From assembly GCA_053919585.1 (NCBI GenBank), contig CM132807.1: DNA of 64,000 nt. One strand, given 5' to 3'. This document shows, piece by piece, positions 38 through 41,035 of this stretch (its first letter is position 1; the number at the start of each line of letters is the position of its first letter). Position numbers and translations under genes: made by a program. Origin of the DNA: Euprymna scolopes. Taxonomy: Eukaryota. The notes below the pieces were generated by a model. The model saw nothing but the letters and a program-made list of their open reading frames with translations. It was not told the DNA's origin and ran no database searches.

Positions 38-3000
38 CTTCGTTTCTTTTTCTCTCTTAATTTCCCCTCTCTGTCCTGCTCTAAGTAAATCTGTCGACCT
101 AGTCCACAAATTCCAAAATTTCATCATGACAAGTTTCAAGAAAAAATACACGATTAAACCCGGTTCTCCAACTTCCAACGTAGACCCCTACTACCATGTC
201 TCCTTCTCCAACATCAGGGGTCTTCGTTCTAACCTTCCAGAGGTTGAAACCCAATTACAGGAGACTAAACCAGACCTTTTATTTTTAAGTGAAACTGGCA
301 TTGGACAGGCTATTTCCCTAGATGAGTTTGCAATTTCAGGATACTCTAACTTAACTTCTAAATCTGACCCCCAAGATCGCCATGGGCATGGAATATGTGC
401 CTATATTAAAGATAGCTTTCCATGTGGGAGGGACATCTCCAGGGAAGATCCTAACTTACCCTATATGTGCTTCCGGGTTGCTTTAGCTCACACTACTGCA
501 TTTATATTTACTCTCTATCGCCCCCACAACAGCGGAGTTACTATCTTTCAAAGCATATCTGAGAAAATTGACCAAGTCTTTTCTACTTATCCTTCAGCTA
601 ACATTCACGTATGTGGAGACTTCAATGTTCACAACGTCGAATGGTTGACCCACTCAAACAAGACCGATGATGAGGGGAGGTTCTGTCATGATTTCTCCAT
701 TGCCTATGACCTCACTCAGATTGTTCAGGAACCTACCCGTGTGCCCGATAATGACGGCCAGTATGCGAGCCTACTAGACCTTTTTCTCACAACTTGCCCT
801 GAACTATGTTCAGTTTCTGTTCTGTCGCCTCTTGGATCTTCCGACCACTCTGTTGTATCAATTAAGATAAAAATGAAATGTAATAAGTCCCCAGACGTAC
901 CTCTTCATCGTACAGTATATCGATACACTAAGGCTGACTGGGATAGCTTCCGTACATTTATATCTGATCTACCTCTGCATTCCATGTTTAAAAAGGATGT
1001 GTCCTCTATAGTATTAGACCTAACTGAATGGTTAATTGTAGGTATTGACCATTTCATACCCTCTAAAAAGTTTCAGAAAAAACCTAACAGCCAGCCATGG
1101 TTCTCTCCAGAATGTGCTGCTGCCATTGCGCACAGAAATCACTTTTTCCACTGCTTCAAACGTAATAGATGTATGGAAACTAAAGCCGTTTTCAGGACTG
1201 CCAGCAACCATTGTAAGAAAGTAATAAGGAACGCAAGAGTGTTGTATGCTAAATCTGTTAAGTCCAAAGTAGCTGAGCAGAGGCTTGGTTCCCAACAGTT
1301 TTGGCAAATAGCAAACAGAATCCTGAATAGAAGCGTGTGCTCCATCCCAACTATTATCAATGGACCTGAGGTAATCTCGTCAGCATCAGACAAAGCCAAA
1401 CTCTTTGTCAAGAACTTTGCAGCTAATTCTACCCTTTGCGACCAAGACCGCCAACCTCCAATATTTCCTCCTGTATCAGAAAACACGCTATGTGATATAC
1501 GTATATCTGTACGTGATGTTGCGAAGCTAATCAAAAACCTTGATTCGAGTAAAGCAACTGGCCCTGATGGTATTCCAATTATAGTACTCAAAAAACTTCA
1601 ACTTGAATTAGCGCCCATACTTACAAAACTGTTTAAACGTTGTCTTAAGGAGAATAGTTTCCCATCTCCCTGGAAAATCTCATCAGTATGCCCTGTATTT
1701 AAGAATTCAGGTGATCGCTCATCCCCCTCTCAGTACAGGCCAATAAGTCTCCTGTGCGTCATGAGTAAGTTGCTAGAATCTGTGTTAAATACAGAAGTAA
1801 TCAAACATCTCAACAAAAATAACCTTCTTAGTGACACTCAATATGGTTTCCGTTCTGCTAGATCTACAGCAGATGTCCTTACAGTTATATCGCATAGGAT
1901 TAGCAAATCTCTCGACGGTGACAATCTTTCTAGGGCAATTGCTCTTGACATATCTAAAGCCTTTGATAGGGTATGGCATAAAGGTTTACTTCATAAAATC
2001 GCTAGCTATGGTATAGCTGGAAAAGTCTTCTCAATTATTAAATCATTTCTTTCTGATAGGTTCATAAGAGTAGTAGTTGAGGGGCAAAAATCAGAAGCTC
2101 ACAGTATTAATGCCGGTGTCCCTCAGGGATCCATCCTGGGCCCAACTCTTTTCCTGATCTACATTAATGATCTTCCAAATCATATCCTTACATCATTTGT
2201 AGACATTTATGCTGACGACACTACCATTTATGGTACCACATCTAAGACAGTAAACGACCAAGTTCTCTCCAATTCTCTCTCCTCTGATCTTGAGCACGTA
2301 GTACAATGGGGAAAGGAGTGGCTGGTTACTTTTAATGCATCTAAAACCAAGCTTCTCTCTTTACATCATCAACATTCTAATTCACATTTGTCATCAATTG
2401 AAATGAATGGCTCTCGTCTTCAGGAGGCCTCAAGTTTTGACAAGCTTCTGGGCTTGACCATTACTCCTGATCTTAAATGGAACACGTATATCAAATCTGT
2501 TGCCAAGGCCGCTGGAAAAATGGTGGGATCTTTCTATCGATCCAGTAGATATCTCACTGCTGATGCTATTCTCTACCTATATAAGAGCCAGGTACGTCCA
2601 AGGATGGAATACTGTTGCCACGTCTGGGCAGGAGCTGCTAGAAAGGACTTGTCCTGCCTTGATAGAGTTCAAAATAGACTTCGTAGCCTCGTAGGAGATG
2701 TCCTTTTCTCCTCCTTGCAACCTCTATCTCACAGAAGAGATGTTGCGAGTTTGTCTCTGATGTATCGTTATTTTCATGGAAAGTGTTCAACTGAGCTTCA
2801 ATCTATGGTCCCCCCTCGCCAAACTTTCACAAGAAACACTCGTCTAGCTGTAAACACTATCAATAATTTCCCCCACTCTTTATCTGTGCCTAAACCTAAA
2901 CGTAGATTCCATGAACAAAGCTTCTTTCTTAGAACTGCACGCCTGTGGAATTGTCTTCCGTTTTCCTGCTTTCCGGCTGACTACAATATGGTTGTGTTCA

Positions 3001-6240: not shown

Positions 6241-7079
6241 GAAAAATATAACATGGAAATTACATAATTGTCGATGCACGTTCTTACACGTAATAGAAAA
6301 TTCAAATGTATTATAAGATAATATTTATTTCAAACTAATTTTAACATGAAAACATACAAATAGTTTTAAAACTTTGTATATACATTTTTTATATATCTTT
6401 TAATAGGCTTATTTTCCATGACTCAATTAACTCTATGACGCGCGTATCATCTTCATTTTCTTTCCCTTCTCTTTCTCAGAGATTCTAGACTAATTAAACC
6501 ATATGACAGGCAGCAGATGGTCACTCTCTTCCTTCTTTCTTCTTTTTTCTTTCTTCTTCTCTTTCCCTTACGCGCAGTTTATTTCCTTCTCTCTATATCC
6601 GTATATTTCTCCCTCTTCTTCCTAGGTTAGTAAACGCGTGTCAAGTCATTTACGTGTAAGAACGTGCATTTTTAGGGGCGTGTGTGTTGGGTGTGTGTGT
6701 GTGTGTGCGTGTGTGTGTGTGTCTGTTGTTACGTCGGGCTACCGGACAGCCGTTTAAGTGTCATAATGTTCTTGTTGTTGTTTTTTTAAAAAATCCCTCC
6801 CATACTAACTTAATTCCCACCCTCTCTATAAAATGTATTAAGTGGATTGCTACTACCACCCCTCTGGTTTTTGAGGGTCGGGGCCCGATTCTTTTTCTTT
6901 ATTTATTTCAGTATCCAAAATGTAATTGTCTAGTTTAGATGCTTGAAAATACCATAAGGTTGAAATAAATTATTGCATCGACAATTATGTAATTTCCGTG
7001 TTATATTTTTATGTTATTGCTCTGTTTACCACATTGAGCTCTCATACCCGGATTTCCTCCTGGAATTATTCCATTATAA

Positions 7080-33095: not shown

Positions 33096-34299
33096 NNNNN
33101 NNNNNNNNNNNNNNNNNNNNNNNNNNNNNNNNNNNNNNNNNNNNNNNNNNNNNNNNNNNNNNNNNNNNNNNNNNNNNNNNNNNNNNNNNNNNNNNNNNNN
33201 NNNNNNNNNNNNNNNNNNNNNNNNNNNNNNNNNNNNNNNNNNNNNNNNNNNNNNNNNNNNNNNNNNNNNNNNNNNNNNNNNNTTATCTCAACGACTATTT
33301 ATCAGAATTTAACAAATAAAAGTTCATTGGAAAGCTGGAATTGTATTGTGGGTAATGTGGCATTTGCTTTTAAGTTCGCACATTAAAGGGATCATCCATA
33401 TTCTAGAGCCTATTACTGGCACATTTTTACATCTATAAAATATTTCGGTAAAAGGGCTGTATCGTTTCACCCTTAAAATCCTTTAAAATTATCACTACAA
33501 TAGGTTTTGGGAGGTGCTGAAAACGAAAGTAATGTTTAAAATTCCAGGAAACGAGGAGTTTCTAACATATGAAAAATTATAGTTTTAAAAAGTTGGGGAT
33601 CACTTTTCTACATTAATTAAACGAAAAAAAGATAACTCATTTCTGACCACTTTTTCGTGGGTCTGTTATTTTTAGGGTTAGGGTTTATAGTGGTATGGTG
33701 GGCCAACACAAACCTACCTTACAAACTTGCTTTCAATGGGTTTTCGGGCGTGCTGAAAATATCGCATTTACATTTTCTGCAAATAAATATTTTCGTAATA
33801 TTAGCAAAAATACGTGCGCTTGCATACAAAATAATGGCCATCACTTATAATATAAAGAATTACGTTGATTAATACTTAAAAAATACTTATTTGCAGGAAA
33901 TTTAAATGCGATATTCGTTTTAAGCACACCCCAAAATCTATGAAAAACAAGTTTTTTAAGGTAAGTTTTGTGTTGATCTACCGTGTCACATTTACCAAAT
34001 AAACACCGACACTAAAATAATAACGATGCACCACCACAAAAAGTTGCCTGTAAAGAGGGTGTTTGTTTTACGTTAAATGATTATACAAAAATGATTCCCT
34101 ACTCTGGAAGTGTAAGCCATGTTTAGTCTCAGAACAATTTCCGATGGTTCGTTGTTCTACACAAGTCCTGGGAGGTGACTGATTCGCAGTAGACAGTTCT
34201 CGAGTTGGAATCCAAAGAGCTAAAGATTCTTCCCGTGTTGACACGAAGAAAACATATGCGAAATTGCTACGGAAAGGTTTAATATTTATGGAGCAATTC

Positions 34300-34410
34300 T
34301 GGTTTCTGATTGGTTGGTAGCAGAACGTGAATTAATTCGATTCGTCAGTTCCTAGCAGCATCGGTTATAAATAGAATCTCCCGACTGTGCGGGATTATAC
34401 CCCATTATAC
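34300..34410 (+). promoter_or_regulatory. Pol II-type core promoter: reverse CCAAT, TATA box, candidate initiator
   Basis: ATTGG at 34309-34313, TATAAATA at 34366-34373, ATTATAC at 34394 and 34404. Confidence 0.55.
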
Positions 34411-34779
34411 TTCCTTTATGATGGGGTGTCTCCCAGCGGCTTCGGCTGCAGGGAGACAGGGTAGTACCAGTCAAGGATTCGTCACTTGACACTCAGCCCA
34501 ACAGGTGAGGGGCCGGGAACCGGCCCACCAGCTGTTGGACTGAGGTACACCGCCTGGGTAATACCTAGGAGGTCCACCCTCCCAGGCCTTGCCACCGGGC
34601 TTTCCGGTGGGGCAAGTTTATTGCTTGCTGCCTGAGGCGCCCCGACTGGGGAATGCCGACGGGGTTACTCAGGCAATTTTTAAAATTGCAGGAGTGCCCC
34701 TCCTTTAGGGGAGCCTGCGGGGTTCCCACTTTCCGGCCTTGTGCCACATTTTGCTGAGGTGGGCAGCAAATAAATATCT
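34399..34779 (+). ncRNA. 381-nt GC-rich multi-hairpin non-coding unit with a Tx1-type 3' tail (SINE-like)
   Basis: At least nine consecutive hairpins. Ends GGCCTTGTGCC..hairpin..AATAAATATCT, like the LINE end at 40485-40535. Confidence 0.7.
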
Positions 34780-34932
34780 ACCCCATTATACTGCTGTATT
34801 ATGGGATGTGTCTCCTACCGTCTTCGTTTTGTAAATGCAGGAGTGATCTTCCTTTAGGTGAGCCATCTTTAGATTCCCAGTTTCCCGGCCTTGTGGCAAA
34901 TATTGCTGATGTGGGCAGCAATTTAAATAACT
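34780..34932 (+). repeat. Internally deleted, diverged second copy of the 381-nt unit
   Basis: Matches the first ~50 and last ~95 nt of 34399-34779. Confidence 0.85.
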
Positions 34933-35162
34933 ACCCCATTATAATGCATTGTCATTTTGGTAAAATATTCTTTTGTACTTCTGCTTCTTATTGTTATCAC
35001 TGTTGTTGTTATTGTCATTGCTATTGTTATCAATACGACGCCGGATTTTTTACCAAGCTGTTTTCCTGTTTGTTTTTTTTTGTTGTTGTTGTTTTTTTAC
35101 TGTTATTTTAAACAGTTTTTGGACTTTTTTTCTTTTTCGCCATTTTTCTAAACTGTGTTGCT

Positions 35163-36650
35163 ATGACTACTTCTGTTAGCCAGATGTCTGTGAATATACC
35201 CGTTAAGACTGCAATAGGAGTGGAGGGGGTTGCTTCAAGCAATAACTGGAGTAAGCCACCAAAGATAGATATTAACGTTGAGGATTTTATTGCAAAAGCG
35301 AAATATTGCTTGCATTTGGCCACTGATAAAGAAATTACAATTGACATACTAAAACTGTAGGAAATACAGAAAAAATGCTTAGTAATTTTTATCGTGGACA
35401 GAAAGATCAAAAGAGTTATTCGGGATATTATAAATTCCCCGCTGGCAACTGCTAGATACAGACCAACACATCTTGTTAAATGCAAATGCTATAATACATG
35501 GAGCGCATTATTTAGCTCGGCACAGGATTGCCTTACCCTCTCACAGAAGGAAATTATAAGAGCAAATTATATCCTTAGATCACAGTACATGGGCAAAAGA
35601 AGAATAACAGTGCCTGTGTTCCACGTCCGCCCTCACGTGGATGGGAAATACATTGGGTCCTTCCTTCTAAAATATGAAGAGATAGCATGAGTATCATGGG
35701 ACTTGGTCATTCGAAATCTTATTAGATTAAACTTTATTAAACATGCCATATTTTCTGGAAGCAGGCGAAGAATGGCTGCCTATCATAGTGGCCGGAATGC
35801 GGCCTACGTGCTGGAATTGCAGCGAAATAGGACACCTTACTTCAAAAATAACAACACAGCGCCAAACTTAAAATCCAGAATAGGACAACACCTAATTGTT
35901 CAAATGGCTGTGAATAACCCCCTTCTTAAAAAAACAGCGAAAAGGGAAAACCCTGGCAAATTGTAGTCGGCAAGAAGACGCCTGTCCGAGTCTCGCTTGA
36001 GAAAACCAGAGAAGAAGCGATGCTGGAAAATGACCCCGGTGCTGCCAAATATGTGGAGATTGTAAATCTCAAAAAAAAATTGATGCACCCATATCCCCCA
36101 GCAACCCTCAATCCCCTACTCCTAAACAGACCACCACTCCTCAATGCCCAATAAACCCCATCACCCAGACACTCACGAAATCCAAAACACGTTCACCGTC
36201 TAAAATGATGCCTCCTCCTGTCGCATCTCCTGTCCCTCAGAACCCCCCCAACTAATCTCTCTAAACCCTGTCAAGAAACCCTTCTCCCAATACACCCCTG
36301 TACCTTGCACATTACCTCTCTTGCATCCCCCGTAAAGACCCCACCTGCTACCAAAATTGATATTGAAAAGAAAACCCTCCTGGGACAAGAAGAGAAGATC
36401 GCAATACTTATTTGGCAGAGATCTGTAAGATTAGGGACCCCCAAATTAATAATGCCTCTTACTTCAAGAAGGTCGATTTATCAAAATTATTAGAGTTCAG
36501 GGGGGTGGCTGATAACCCAATTGACGATCCTTCGAATTTTCCCAAGGCCAAGAGAGTTCTCACGGTCATACGAAAAAAGGAGGAAGCAAAGAACCTATGG
36601 CCACTGCTGGAAGAAACCGATAAGTCGTTTAATCTAGCAGTGCCCTTTTA
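35163..36650 (+). pseudogene. Disrupted Tx1 ORF1
   Basis: Zinc-knuckle remnant RPTCWNCSEIGHL (~35800-35840) followed by a Pro-rich region. Confidence 0.75.
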
Positions 36651-36876
36651 AAGACACGGACATTAAGAACTTAAGAAAATGTTGTGTGGGCCAGGTCCCT
36701 GTCAAAATGCATCCCTCCCTCTATAGGATTGACAAACTAACAGACCTTTCGCATGTCTGCGGTATCTCTCGTGACGGTCATCGACACTTCGATAGGTACT
36801 CATTTCCTCACGAGAGCCATCGGCACGCTTACGTCCGCGATATTTGTTTCTAGTTCTCAACCCTCAAGGCACAATC

Positions 36877-39800
36877 ATGGATCTCAAGCTTGTATGAATT
36901 TCCGAGAACTAAGGGCCGACTCGGGAAAATTGCGCTTGGGTTTGGACCTGCAGCACCTTGGAGTGGATATTTGTTGCGTGCAGGAAACACACTTTATTCC
37001 TGGTAACCATTTACGTGCGCTGTCTAAGACCTTTTGTGCTCACTCAACGTACTTTAATTTTCATTCGAGAGGGGTTTCCTGGCTAGTTAAAAGGTCTTTA
37101 GATGTGTCGTATGACCCGTGTTACATGAACCTTGAGGAAAGACTGTGTGTTTTGGATGTTACCATAAAGGGAAAGGCTTTTCATTTTATCGGGGGTTATG
37201 CGCCCGATAGCCACGTTGCGCGAGCTGCCTTCTTTCGGCGAATTGAGCAGTCTATGTATACTTCTCGAACGGTTATCTTAGCGGGAGACTGGAACGCGGT
37301 CCTGGATCCCGAGTTAGATCGATTATTACCATCTAGGGGAAATAACAGAGCTTGGGATGCTTTTTTATTTCGTGAATTTGTGAGCAAGTTCGATCTTATC
37401 GACAAATTCCGAAATGAAAAGCCCCGTGCGTCAGTGTTGACTTGGACAGGTAGACGCGGCTCCGGTCTGGTACAACTCTCGAGTTGTATCGACCGGCTCT
37501 TAGTAAGGCAAGTCGACGTAGGAGTATTGAATTGCCCAAATTTCCACAATATAGTTTACTCGGATCACAGACTTATCCGTGTACGGGTTAACTTAGATAG
37601 ACTTAAGCCTAGATTAGCCGGTTATTGGAAGCTCAACACGTCGTTTTTCGACGTGAAGGGCTTATGTGACGGGCTACTACTAATCCTAAAAAGGGAACTT
37701 ACGGATGCAATTATTGGGAATAAGTGGTGAGTAAAAATTAAGGAAGTCATTAGATCCTTGCCTGCCAATTTTAGCAAAAGACTCGACCTAGAATCTAGGG
37801 CAGTTAAAGCGACATTAGAGTCTAGATTAGATCGAGCAAGGAGGATTGTTAGTGTTTATATAATTAAGGCTTAGCTTGCCTCCCTTACTGAACAGAAGCA
37901 CCAATCTTTAGTGATTAGGGATAGGTTAAAAAGAATGCCCCAGGAAGCAAGAAACATGGCTGCTGAACTGCGTGCAGAAGAATTTCGGCAACCTGCTGAT
38001 AGGCTCATCGCTCATGTCACATTGCCGGACGGCTGTACCGTGACCACAAACATTGCCGGGTGTGCTGGAGGCGTTTTGGTCATTTCCAGGGGCTTTTTTC
38101 CATGAAACCCGATCTTTCATCATATCTTTCGACGACTTAAGTGGCTAGGTGCGAAGGTGGCATAACGGAGGATAAAATAATTGAAACCTTGAAGCGGGTC
38201 GGTTTTAATAAGTCTCCGGGAATCGATGATCTGCCCTACGAAGTGTATTTGAGGTTGTCGCACATCATTATTCCCTTGCTGACGGTTTTAATTAACCCAT
38301 GGTTTAGGAACGGCTCAATCCCCAAGTACTTTACCATGGGTGCCGTAAAGCTTGTTCGCAAAAACAAAGATGGTTTGGATGGGATAGGGAATTATCAGCC
38401 CTTGACGATGCTAAACGCTGAGTTAAAGATTTTGGTCAAGATTCTCGCAAATCGTCTGCGGTTTGTCCTGGCTCGTCTTATTAGCCCCGAGCAAACATGT
38501 GCCGTGAAGGGCAGGACAATCCAAGAAAACTTGGACGCGATACGCTTGATGATAGAAAAAGTCGACACTGAGGCCGCGCTTATTCATTTAGATCAGTCTA
38601 AAGACTTCGATAGGTACTACATTGGTACTAGGGGGCTGTTTCGTCGGCGGCCGGTTTTGGCCCGCAATTTTGCTCGTGGGTTCATCTTCTCTATGCTAAC
38701 CCCGCGGTGATGGTAAAAGTGAATGGGAAGAGGTCGAGACCCCTCAGTCTGTCACGTCTAATTCGCAGGCTATGGGTGAATCCGGTCCTACGCAGGATTA
38801 CTTTACCAGGTGCGGATACTCAGGTAAAGTACTCCGCCTACGCCGACGATGTAATAGTGCTTGTAACGAGCAATGCTGAGATTAGTGTCGTCGGTGTAGA
38901 AATCAGATTGTATGAAACGGTAACAGGGGCCAAAATTAACTGCGACGGTTTTGCGCATCGGTGCCTGGAAGGGTATGCCCCTTAAGGGACCGTTTAGTTA
39001 GAGCGACGAGCCTTGCAAAATACTCGGCGTTTGGTTTTGTCCTGACCTCCAGCTGGTGAAAAATTGGTCCGAGGGTCTGAAAGCGGTACGGTCCGCAGCC
39101 GCGCTGTGAATCAGTAGAAACCTTTCATTAAAGGGGAGAACGAAGGTGTGTAATATCCACATCTATCCAATCTTTATTTATCGTCTATCAGTTCTTCCAA
39201 TCCCGTCCGATACTCTGCTATATCTGCAAAGGACTCTTTTCAACTTCTTATGGCTTGAGTTTCTCTCAAGAGTGAAGGAAAGCCTCTCTAATGCTCTGCT
39301 GTTGTCTCGAAAGGCATTATATCGGGTTTTAGTGAAAGGGTCCGTAAGGATGTTATCGGTGAAGGGCTCCCTTTGACGGACCGGCAGCTCCGCTCAATTT
39401 GGGTTGGCCGCCTGGGTCGGGGTGTCTCACTAACGATGAGGCTTCCCTGGCCTGGCTGGTAATTCGAGATGCTTTCTGGGTCGGTAAGAGACTTTATTCA
39501 GTTGGCTTGGCAATTTCGCCTATTTGTAAACGGTGCGGCGATGAGGTCGAGACTTTATGTCACGCCTTCGTTTATTGTCGCATCGTGGTGCCGCTAATAG
39601 AGTTTGTTACAGGTCTCATGGTTCGCATACTGAACATATCGTAACTAAATTTGGTTCCTATCAATGTCTGTAGCAATTGGACGCCGAAAACAGATAGGCT
39701 TAGAAAAGAAATGTGCCTGATCTTGCTAGCGGTTATGGAGGTTCTACGGATCTGAAGACTTCGCTCCCCTCGACCTTATACGAATATTCCGTTATCATTT

Positions 39801-39900
39801 GAAGGTTCGTATCAAGGCCGAGAGAGTTAAACTCTTTTCCTCGGACTTTGTTGGGTGAGAGAAGCAAATTTTAACTGGTTCTTGGATGTGCCTTAGAGAA
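36877..39900 (+). pseudogene. Disrupted Tx1 ORF2 (APE-RT-CCHC)
   Basis: CVQETH, GDWN, SDH, YWKLN, KSPGID, YQPLTMLN, DQSKDFD, YADD, CKRCGDEVETLCHAFVYC. Confidence 0.92.
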
Positions 39901-41035
39901 AAAGAATTTTAACTAGCAGAAACGAAGTCAGCTCTTACTCGCTTTTAGTTCAGAGTAGGTCACGCTTTAGAATAGAGTAGGACCAGTTTTGTAGGCCGTT
40001 GTGTTCATAACCTAGCTAGTGTGTGAAAGTGATCATTAGGCCCCGTTTTATATTTGTCCCGGGGTTTTTGGCCCCATTCCCCTCCACAGTTAGGTAACAG
40101 ATCGCTTGATTTGGCAGAGATGCTGGTTCCCTTTCGAAGTTTTCGAAAGAGGTGCTGTTCGGGCCCACATCACCATTTCAACTGGCAAATCAACGTATCT
40201 GCCACAGTTTAGTAAGTGGGGGGCCTTTCGTTACTAACATTGTACATAATTCATTTATATATTGTATTATATAATTTTTATATTCCAAATCCACCTTTTT
40301 CTTATGGATTTTAATTAGGTTATCATAATATGATGTTCTTATGGTGAGTGCTGAAGGGTTTATACGCTGATGGACGTATAGTATGAATGTGGTATTGTGG
40401 TGAAAGTAGAGTGAAAGTAGGAAATAGTTAGGTTAGATTAGTTAGTATTAGTCAGCAGAGATCGTCCCTCCCCCTCCCATGTTCGGCCTTGTGCCAAATT
40501 TTTCTATTTTACTGTCAAAATTGAAAATAATATCTACCCTATTAAAATAATATCTACCCTATTGTAGTGCAAAAATGTTGTAATGCCCACTTTTCGAAAC
40601 TATAATTTCGATATCGCTTGAAAGCTACTTGTTTCTTGAAATTTTAAACGTTATTTTTGTTTTCAGCATTTTCGATTGGACAAAACGTAATTAAAACGAT
40701 TTGTTTTTTTTCACTCTTACAGTCAGCTTTGAATAGATCCCTTCAATCCACCATTTGAAAAAGAGGTTATTCCGAAATATATAATGGAAGTTATAACATA
40801 AAATAGAACCCCTACAAGTAAGATACTTATGCGTAATACAATTAAATATATATATAGAGAGAGATATATATGTATATACTTATTGATTTGCAAATTGTCT
40901 CATGTTTTGTCTTCCGTCCTCAACACCAACTAGATCAAATCCATCGCATTATGATAGCCTTTTAATCGCTTCAACATGCCTATCCCACACACAGCTTTAA
41001 GCAAACTGCATCTACTTTCAAGCAAACTACGTCTC

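What the first reader, a model, noticed from the sequence alone, without database searches (positions are those of the whole stretch)
34399..34779. 381-nt almost fully base-paired RNA of unknown class
Seen: consecutive hairpins ACCCCATTATA/TATGATGGGGT, TGTCTCCC/GGGAGACA (with a CTTCGG loop), GTCAAG/CTTGAC, CTCAG.CCAACAG/CTGTTGGACTGAG, CCTGGGT/ACCTAGG, CTTGCC.CCGG/CCGG.GGCAAG, GCCTGAG/CTCAGGC, GCAGG/CCTGC, TTTGCTG/CAGCAAA. Copy 2 shows a compensatory change (ATTGCTG/CAGCAAT). It is a GC island in AT-rich DNA. I recognise no snRNA, SRP, RNase P or ribozyme core in it.
Basis: partly seen in the sequence, partly recalled or inferred. Interest (0 to 1): 0.7.

Follow-up and report, generated by a model that had tools for sequence, protein, structure and literature searches.

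The report
Hairpin-rich retroposon riding a LINE
The 381-base GC-rich stretch is a real, strongly folded RNA whose hairpins have been kept by selection, but it is a short non-coding jumping element copied by the neighbouring LINE, not a new cellular RNA gene.

Summary
The hairpins are real. The unit at 34399-34779 folds far better than shuffled sequence (z about -8), while neighbouring DNA scores about 0. No Rfam family matches it.

It is not a free-standing RNA gene. Its last 45 nt have the same layout as the 3' tail of the decayed APE+RT LINE that follows it: a GGCCTTGTGCCA box, a terminal hairpin, then AAATATCT. Three more distant cephalopod LINEs share that layout.

Unit 1, a deletion copy (unit 2) and the LINE are stacked head to tail at one junction motif, ACCCC+ATTATA.

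A second copy of the unit (about 93% identical over the shared part) lies next to a LINE of the same family on a public cephalopod contig, L127. Sixteen body positions differ between the two copies and none breaks a predicted pair (chance about 1.5e-4). Two pairs changed on both sides, and five changes pass through G·U, which fits the + strand only.

In every unit the upstream junction motif pairs with the unit's first bases, although the motif differs between the two loci. This is unexplained.

Best reading: a promoter-less, SINE-like partner of an L1/Tx1-type LINE with a selected RNA fold.

Earlier scan notes describe 381-384-nt hairpin modules elsewhere in this genome, assigned there to a copia LTR. 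They may be the same family; I could not check this.

The parts
34106..34398 (+). Left part of the landing pad. It is non-repetitive within the window, with a CCAAT-like box near 34308, a TATA box (TATAAATA) at 34368-34375 and an initiator-like TTATACC at 34395-34401. It ends in ...ATTAT before ACCCC.
   Evidence: Sequence. No excess folding, z = +0.3. No other copy in the window. Promoter function is inferred only.
34399..34409 (+). Junction motif ACCCC+ATTATA, the 5' arm of the junction hairpin. It recurs at 34780 and 34933, and in decayed form (ACCCT+ATT) at 40536 and 40556.
34417..34427 (+). 3' arm of the junction hairpin (UAUGAUGGGGU). It forms 11 bp with the junction motif, including one G·U.
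   Evidence: -14.4 kcal/mol, z = -4.1. The equivalent arms in unit 2 and in L127 match their own junction motifs.
34427..34677 (+). GC-rich body: a row of hairpins, two of them capped by UUCG loops. Structure-preserving differences from the L127 copy fall at 34434/34451, 34476/34483, 34500/34536, 34596/34606, 34611/34629, 34613/34627 and 34647/34658.
34675..34682 (+). AATTTTTA with a T5 run, conserved in L127. It would stop RNA polymerase III, so a full-length Pol III transcript is unlikely.
   Evidence: The termination rule is established knowledge.
34735..34746 (+). Tail box GGCCTTGTGCCA, shared with the LINE tails.
34750..34770 (+). Terminal tail hairpin UUUGCUG/CAGCAAA, in the same position as the hairpin of the LINE tails.
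   Evidence: the same register in six tails, with different stem sequences.
34771..34784 (+). Terminus TAAATATCT followed by the constant ACCCC. It contains AATAAA in unit 1 only.
34780..34932 (+). Unit 2: an older copy lacking unit nt 47-279. It keeps the head (81% identical) and the tail (78%).
34933..40540 (+). Decayed LINE. ORF1-like region 35367-35844, APE endonuclease 36888-38066, reverse transcriptase 38264-39746 with zf-RVT. Its tail has the box at 40485-40496 and a hairpin, and ends ATATCT+ACCCT.
   Evidence: The longest open stretches are 329 and 189 aa.
40541..40560 (+). 20-bp repeat of the last LINE bases plus ACCCT. It is either a minimal 5'-truncated insertion or a slippage duplication.
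34080..34105 (.). Left copy of an imperfect target-site duplication of about 26 bp, made when the whole block 34106-40560 inserted. The right copy is at 40561-40593.
33515..34105 (.). Foldback (palindromic) repeat into whose right arm the block is inserted. The arm continues at 40586-40668.

Best explanation
The 381-nt unit is a non-coding, non-autonomous retroposon. It is SINE-like but has no tRNA, 7SL, 5S or snRNA head and no polymerase III promoter. An L1/Tx1-type LINE copies it.

Shown:
- It carries the LINE's 3' recognition tail: a box, a terminal hairpin, then AAATATCT+ACCCC.
- It sits at exactly the same junction as that LINE.
- It occurs next to a LINE of the same family at an independent locus.
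- The hairpins of its body and tail have been preserved by selection on the + strand RNA.

Inferred mechanism: the LINE reverse transcriptase recognises the tail hairpin and starts target-primed reverse transcription. Insertion happens immediately after the ACCCC terminus of a resident element, duplicating 7-8 bp of target, so units and LINEs pile up head to tail. Here the pile lies about 30 nt downstream of a TATA box, which may supply transcription, since the unit has no promoter of its own. In L127 read-through from the upstream LINE could do the same.

The structured body most likely makes the RNA a stable, protein-bound template. The hairpin across each junction most likely defines or protects the ends of the unit in read-through transcripts. 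These last two roles are guesses.

The whole block (pad, units, LINE) reached its present place by one LINE-type retroposition into a foldback repeat. Unit 1, the best preserved member, probably joined later.
For: Tail homology: unit 1, unit 2, the window LINE and the LINEs in L001, L002 and L124 share the box and the layout.

The tail hairpin keeps its register while its stem changes: UUUGCUG, AUUGCUG, UUUUC, UUGUAU, UUGUAA, each with its matching partner arm.

The LINE has APE, RT and zf-RVT domains. Its relatives come from cephalopods.

Second locus: L127 holds a LINE 83-89% identical to the window LINE. Directly behind its tail is a copy of the unit, window 34416-34784 matching L127 8831-9210 at 90%, flanked by the repeat ACCCC+TCAAAATC.

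Structure: z = -8.0 for the window unit and -8.9 for L127.

Substitution test: I projected the L127 differences onto the fold predicted from the window copy alone. Of 16 substituted body positions, 9 lie in pairs and all pairs are kept. Two pairs are compensatory doubles and five changes go through G·U. About 7 broken pairs are expected; P(0 broken) = 1.5e-4 in 200,000 simulations.

The G·U changes only work on the + strand, which is the LINE's sense.

Block insertion with a long target-site duplication.
Against: - Only two full copies and one deletion copy could be obtained, so copy number, consensus and true ends are unknown.
- The LINE clade (Tx1 versus L1) was not determined.
- The unit's body resembles nothing in the LINEs examined, so its origin is unknown.
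- AATAAA in the tail is present in unit 1 only.
- Earlier scan reports place what may be the same module inside a copia LTR as a tandem repeat. If arrays grow mainly by unequal recombination, repeated retroposition would not be needed.
Confidence: 0.75

Rival explanations
1. The unit is a tandem-repeat module of a Ty1/copia LTR. The 293 nt before it (34106-34398) would be the U3 part of that LTR, and arrays would grow or shrink by recombination or by strand-transfer slippage rather than by LINE-mediated insertion. This can coexist with a LINE-derived origin of the module.
For: Earlier notes of this scan describe a GC-rich, hairpin-rich module of 383-384 nt with a junction hairpin. It sits at one fixed spot of a copia LTR in 0 to more than 20 copies. 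The pad has CCAAT and TATA boxes about 30 nt before the junction and starts with TG at 34111.
Against: Identity of those modules with this unit could not be checked: sequence look-ups returned nothing. This window has no second LTR, no copia coding sequence nearby and no 5-bp duplication. The block is instead flanked by a duplication of about 26 bp and ends with the LINE terminus. In L127 the unit is flanked by an 8-bp repeat and a LINE, with no primer-binding-site match and no copia domain within 3.6 kb.
Confidence: 0.3
2. A free-standing gene for a new class of structured small RNA, transcribed from the TATA promoter. The downstream copies would be gene duplicates.
For: A TATA box 31 nt upstream and an initiator-like motif at the start. 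A strong, conserved fold with no Rfam match.
Against: The LINE-type tail and shared junction with a LINE. The L127 copy has a LINE, not this promoter, upstream. The promoter region lies inside a retroposed block. A deletion derivative keeps only the head and the tail, as non-autonomous retroposons do.
Confidence: 0.05
3. A retrozyme or viroid-like element: a tandem unit that makes circular RNA through an unrecognised self-cleaving ribozyme.
For: Unit length, tandem arrangement and a dense fold. Hammerhead candidates are noted elsewhere in this genome.
Against: No ribozyme family at E up to 10. No CUGANGA core on either strand in either copy. Only 1.4 copies here and a single copy in L127. The LINE tail gives a simpler account.
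Confidence: 0.03
4. The junction hairpin is functional in targeting or is made at integration. Either the unit's first bases act as an RNA guide that picks the insertion site, or an inverted copy of the junction is synthesised during 5' joining (snap-back).
For: In three of three units the arm matches the local junction, although the locus-specific part differs (ATTATA versus TCAAAATC) and the loops are unrelated. The three LINE 5' ends at the same kind of junction have no such arm.
Against: Only two independent loci. LINEs reach the same sites without any guide. A fixed multi-copy pad with co-adapted sub-families explains the data as well and agrees with the earlier LTR notes. No known APE-type LINE works this way.
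Confidence: 0.12

Closest known systems
SINEU with Tx1-Mar LINEs of crocodilians (Kojima 2015, PMC4494074)
   Same: A short non-coding partner and a Tx1-type LINE share one insertion target that lies in another repeat. Copies are found inserted next to or into one another. Some Tx1 families there target LTR retrotransposons.
   Different: SINEU heads come from U1 or U2 snRNA and the elements end in poly(A). This unit has no recognisable small-RNA head and no poly(A), and it has a 250-nt hairpin-rich body under structural selection plus a hairpin across the junction.
Stringent SINE/LINE pairs with a shared 3' stem-loop (eel UnaSINE1/UnaL2; Kajikawa and Okada 2002, cited in PMC4494074)
   Same: The non-autonomous element carries the partner LINE's 3' tail, including a conserved terminal hairpin of the kind needed for recognition by the reverse transcriptase.
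   Different: Those SINEs have a tRNA-derived head with an internal Pol III promoter. This unit has none, and it contains a T5 run.
Short internally deleted elements (SIDEs) of R2, and spliced-leader-gene LINEs such as SLACS/CZAR (recalled from knowledge, not checked in papers here)
   Same: Promoter-less elements that insert at a fixed site just downstream of a host promoter and depend on co-transcription. The non-autonomous forms keep the ends needed for mobilisation.
   Different: Those LINEs use a restriction-like endonuclease. R2 and its SIDEs carry an HDV-like ribozyme at the 5' end. No ribozyme was found here, and the unit's 5' part is unrelated to the LINE's 5' end.
U2-headed self-stacking retroposons noted in this same genome (scan notes s1-244878, s1-254966, s1-247328)
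   Same: Hairpin-rich short units and their Tx1-type LINE pile up head to tail at a landing site. Arrays can be retroposed as one block with a long target-site duplication.
   Different: A different head (no U2 piece; Rfam found none) and a different landing motif (ACCCC).

Membership tests
Canonical SINE | Head derived from tRNA, 7SL, 5S or snRNA, with an internal Pol III promoter | tested here: not met
   No Rfam hit to these families, even at E up to 10. A conserved T5 run inside the unit would stop Pol III.
Canonical SINE | 3' tail shared with a partner LINE | tested here: met
   Box, hairpin and terminus are shared with the adjacent LINE and with LINEs in L001, L002, L124 and L127.
Canonical SINE | Short, non-coding, with target-site duplications | tested here: met
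   381-392 nt. Indels of 1-3 nt between copies break every frame. An 8-bp repeat flanks the L127 copy, and 7-11 bp repeat at each window junction.
Tx1-clade target-specific LINE with partner element | LINE with APE endonuclease, reverse transcriptase and a C-terminal zinc knuckle | tested here: met
   Pfam Exo_endo_phos, RVT_1 and zf-RVT.
Tx1-clade target-specific LINE with partner element | Phylogenetic placement of the RT in the Tx1 clade | not tested
   No reference set was available. The named relatives only say 'reverse transcriptase domain-containing', from cephalopods.
Tx1-clade target-specific LINE with partner element | LINE and partner share one insertion target | tested here: met
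   The same junction motif precedes unit 1, unit 2 and the LINE in the window. In L127 the LINEs and the unit abut at ACCCC. Only two loci were seen.
Retrozyme or hammerhead-bearing tandem repeat | Hammerhead (or other) self-cleaving motif in each unit | tested here: not met
HDV-like ribozyme at a LINE or SIDE 5' end | Nested double-pseudoknot ribozyme at the 5' junction | tested here: inconclusive
   No hit to the Rfam HDV-like families at E up to 10. No dedicated descriptor search and no cleavage assay were done.
Copia LTR tandem module (earlier scan reports) | Lies inside an LTR bounded by TG...CA with a 5-bp duplication, or next to copia genes | tested here: not met
   At this locus the block has a duplication of about 26 bp and ends in the LINE terminus. 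There is no LTR partner in the window and no copia signal in L127. The pad could still be LTR-derived.
Any Rfam family | Score at or above the gathering cut-off | tested here: not met
   for the window; for L127.

The most novel reading that the evidence does not exclude
The first bases of the unit are complementary to whatever junction it sits behind, that is, the resident element's ACCCC terminus plus the local 7-8 bp. This could mean that a non-autonomous retroposon of an APE-type LINE selects its integration site by RNA-DNA base pairing, in the manner of group II intron EBS-IBS pairing. Alternatively, integration itself could write an inverted copy of the target into the element.
Probability: 0.12. 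Interest if true: 0.8.

Novelty: new variant of a known kind. Interest (0 to 1): 0.45.

Why it matters
It removes a candidate 'new RNA class' and places it among LINE-dependent retroposons. It also shows two unusual things.

First, a retroposon without any small-RNA head carries a 250-nt multi-hairpin body under clear structural selection. That implies the RNA fold itself is needed for propagation.

Second, a hairpin ties each unit to the junction it sits behind. If that pairing takes part in site choice or end definition, it would be a new mechanism for site-specific retrotransposition, and possibly a programmable one.

It also gives a mechanistic candidate, repeated LINE-mediated insertion at one terminus, for the variable arrays that other windows of this genome show.

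Tried and rejected
- Rfam at gathering and at E up to 10 gave nothing usable.
- Other copies in the window: none beyond unit 2 and the LINE tail.
- A translated frame of the unit found no relative in the protein word search. The ORF inside the unit is not on record in the exact look-up.
- The metagenome scan with the tail box returned 120 loci. All were chance hits or an unrelated bacterial-looking motif.
- Cluster look-ups for eight L127 ORFs were all singletons, so no further contigs of that LINE family could be fetched.
- Hammerhead core search was negative on both strands.
- Solo-LTR reading of the block: no TG...CA with a matching 5-bp duplication was found.
- Copia primer-binding site in L127: absent.
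- Scan-note look-ups by sequence and by relatives were blank.
- The body is not similar to any part of the LINEs in the window, L001, L002, L123-L126 or L127.

Full report
**1. Observation**

- As RNA it folds to -196.9 kcal/mol. Dinucleotide shuffles give -149.7 +/- 5.9, so z = -8.0 and none of 100 shuffles is as good. The opposite strand gives z = -6.5.
- My own controls of equal length all lie between z = -1.0 and +1.2. They covered the LINE coding regions, the LINE UTRs and the 294 nt upstream.
- The excess sits in the body (unit nt 47-279, z = -6.1) and in the first hairpin (z = -3.5 to -4.1).
- 69% of bases are paired, so 'almost fully base-paired' is too strong.
- The unit has 58% G+C in a window of 35%.
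- Rfam gives nothing at curated thresholds over the whole window and only noise at E up to 10.

**2. What surrounds it**

Directly after the unit comes a 153-nt copy (34780-34932) that keeps unit nt 1-46 and 280-381 and lacks the body.

Next comes a decayed LINE (34933-40540):
- an ORF1-like region;
- an APE endonuclease;
- a reverse transcriptase with a zf-RVT knuckle;
- longest open stretches of 329 and 189 aa.

All three begin with ACCCCATTATA, and each is preceded by ...AT(C/A)T. The LINE ends ...ATATCT ACCCT and is followed by a 20-bp repeat of its own end.

**3. The unit carries the LINE's tail**

From the box GGCCTTGTGCCA onward, six tails have the same layout: box, two or three bases, a hairpin, then AATAAATA-like bases to the end. 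The six are unit 1, unit 2, the window LINE and three more distant LINEs from another cephalopod assembly (L001, L002, L124).

With the 5' arms left-aligned and the 3' arms right-aligned, the hairpin keeps its place while the stem differs:
- UUUGCUG/CAGCAAA in unit 1;
- AUUGCUG/CAGCAAU in unit 2;
- UUUUC/GAAAA in the window LINE;
- UUGUAU/AUACAA in L001;
- UUGUAA/UUGCAA in L002;
- UUGUAA/UUACAA in L124.

A conserved 3' stem-loop shared by a LINE and a short partner is the hallmark of stringent SINE/LINE pairs (Kajikawa and Okada 2002, as cited in PMC4494074).

**4. A second locus**

The protein word search with the LINE pieces led, through P0039, to contig L127 of ENA assembly ERZ26051807. P0039 is 91% identical to the window's zinc-knuckle piece. 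Named relatives of this LINE group come from Acanthosepion pharaonis and Argonauta hians, so the genome is most likely a cephalopod's.

L127 holds:
- a partial LINE;
- then a nearly intact LINE 83-89% identical in DNA to the window's;
- then, directly behind that LINE's tail, a copy of the unit. Window 34416-34784 matches L127 8831-9210 at 90%.

That copy folds as well as the window's (z = -8.9). It is flanked on both sides by ACCCC+TCAAAATC, and no TATA region precedes it.

A weaker relative of the unit's 3' half lies in L124 of the other assembly (nhmmer E = 2.5e-8).

**5. Selection on the fold**

I took the fold predicted from the window copy alone and projected the L127 differences onto it. 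In the body, 16 positions differ.
- Seven are unpaired.
- Nine lie in seven pairs, and every pair is kept.
- There are two double changes: A-U to G-C at 34500/34536, and C-G to U-A at 34613/34627.
- Five one-sided changes pass through G·U: three C-G to U·G, one G·U to A-U, and one U·G to C-G.

I simulated random substitutions of the same number and the same transition share 200,000 times. They break about seven pairs on average and break none in 0.015% of trials. RNAalifold on the pair reports no broken pair among 130.

The G·U intermediates are pairs only on the + strand, which is the sense of the LINE. The body is therefore an RNA structure under purifying selection.

It also corrects one helix: GGCAAG pairs with the downstream CUUGCU, not with the upstream CUUGCC.

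**6. How the pile was built (inference)**

ACCCC is constant at the end of every element at both loci. The bases after it are locus-specific and are repeated after the unit like a target-site duplication: ATTATA(C) in the window, TCAAAATC in L127.

The simplest reading is this:
- The elements end in ...ATATCT ACCCC.
- New copies insert right after the ACCCC of a resident element by target-primed reverse transcription, duplicating 7-8 bp.
- Repetition gives head-to-tail stacks.

In the window the best preserved member (unit 1) lies next to the pad and the most decayed member (the LINE) lies farthest from it. That fits successive insertions at the pad, though this order is not proven.

The whole block 34106-40560 lies inside the right arm of a foldback repeat (33515-34105, continuing at 40586-40668). 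It has an imperfect duplication of about 26 bp and ends with the LINE terminus. So a read-through RNA carrying pad plus LINE was retroposed there as one piece.

The pad has a CCAAT-like box, a TATA box 31 nt before the junction and an initiator-like motif at it. The unit has no promoter of its own and contains a T5 run, so transcription from such a pad, or read-through from an upstream LINE as in L127, is the likely source of template RNA.

**7. The junction hairpin (unexplained)**

In unit 1, unit 2 and the L127 unit, the junction motif in front of the unit pairs with bases about 7-17 of the unit proper:
- 11 bp in unit 1, -14.4 kcal/mol, z = -4.1;
- 9 bp in unit 2, -10.7 kcal/mol, z = -3.1;
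- about 10 bp in L127.

The locus-specific half of the motif differs between the loci, the arm differs with it, and the three loops are unrelated. The LINE 5' ends at the same kind of junction have no such arm (z = 0 to +1.2).

Three accounts remain:
- sub-families adapted to a fixed multi-copy pad;
- an RNA guide for site choice;
- an inverted copy written at integration.

I favour the first. LINEs reach the same sites without an arm, and earlier notes of this scan place similar modules at one fixed spot of a copia LTR. Two loci cannot decide the matter.

**8. Relation to earlier scan notes**

Notes on other pieces of this genome describe GC-rich hairpin modules of 381-384 nt in tandem, with a junction hairpin. 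Follow-ups assigned them to a copia LTR. They may be this family, but sequence look-ups were blank and I could not compare them.

At this locus I found no LTR boundaries, no 5-bp duplication and no copia genes. L127 has no copia signal either. The pad could still be a transduced piece of LTR.

What this window adds is the partner LINE at the same junction, and the shared tail.

**9. Comparison with known systems**

The closest described case is SINEU with Tx1-Mar in crocodilians. There, short partners and Tx1 LINEs share a target inside another transposon, and some Tx1 families target LTR elements (PMC4494074). L1-Tx1 LINEs and many unclassified SINEs are reported as recently active in octopus (PMC13282606; PMC8967140).

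This unit differs in four ways:
- it has no small-RNA head;
- it has no poly(A);
- it has a large selected fold;
- it has a junction hairpin.

I therefore rate it a new variant of a known kind.

**10. Verdict**

The 'unknown RNA class' reading is replaced by a structured LINE-dependent retroposon (confidence 0.75). Ribozyme and free-standing-gene readings are unlikely. The junction pairing is the one feature that could turn out to be new biology.

Noticed in passing
window 33515-34105 and 40586-40668: A foldback (palindromic) repeat of about 0.6 kb, with arms about 67-80% alike. Its right arm is split by the 6.45-kb block and carries an imperfect duplication of about 26 bp at the break.
   Followed up: partly
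window 40541-40560: A 20-bp tandem repeat of the LINE's last bases plus ACCCT. It is either a minimal 5'-truncated insertion at the same site or a slippage duplication.
   Followed up: no
L124 3688-3857 (minus strand): A diverged relative of the unit's 3' half (nhmmer E = 2.5e-8), with GC-rich hairpins upstream, in a different cephalopod assembly (ERZ21867824). Hairpin-rich partners of this LINE group are therefore not confined to one species.
   Followed up: partly
L127 10379-10499 (minus strand): A 5S rRNA match (44 bits; gathering score 38) 1.2 kb downstream of the unit. It could be a 5S gene, a pseudogene or a 5S-headed SINE.
   Followed up: no
L018, L024, L072, L082, L093 (metagenome contigs): These contigs share a conserved motif of about 60 nt that ends in the same 12-nt box as the LINE tail, in what look like bacterial contigs. 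It is unrelated to the LINE and has no Rfam hit at gathering. It may be an undescribed bacterial non-coding element.
   Followed up: partly
window 1608-2258: A second, distant reverse-transcriptase fragment (24% identical to the L001 RT) from another LINE family.
   Followed up: no
window 6920-6990: Another first-stage note reports a hammerhead ribozyme candidate here. Rfam at gathering thresholds found no hammerhead anywhere in the window.
   Followed up: no
window 34772-34779 and 40528-40535: The unit and LINE tails end in AAUAUCU. As I recall, that string also occurs in U2 snRNA. Other notes describe U2-homing relatives in this genome, so the tail end might be a relic of a U2 target. Not tested.
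   Followed up: no
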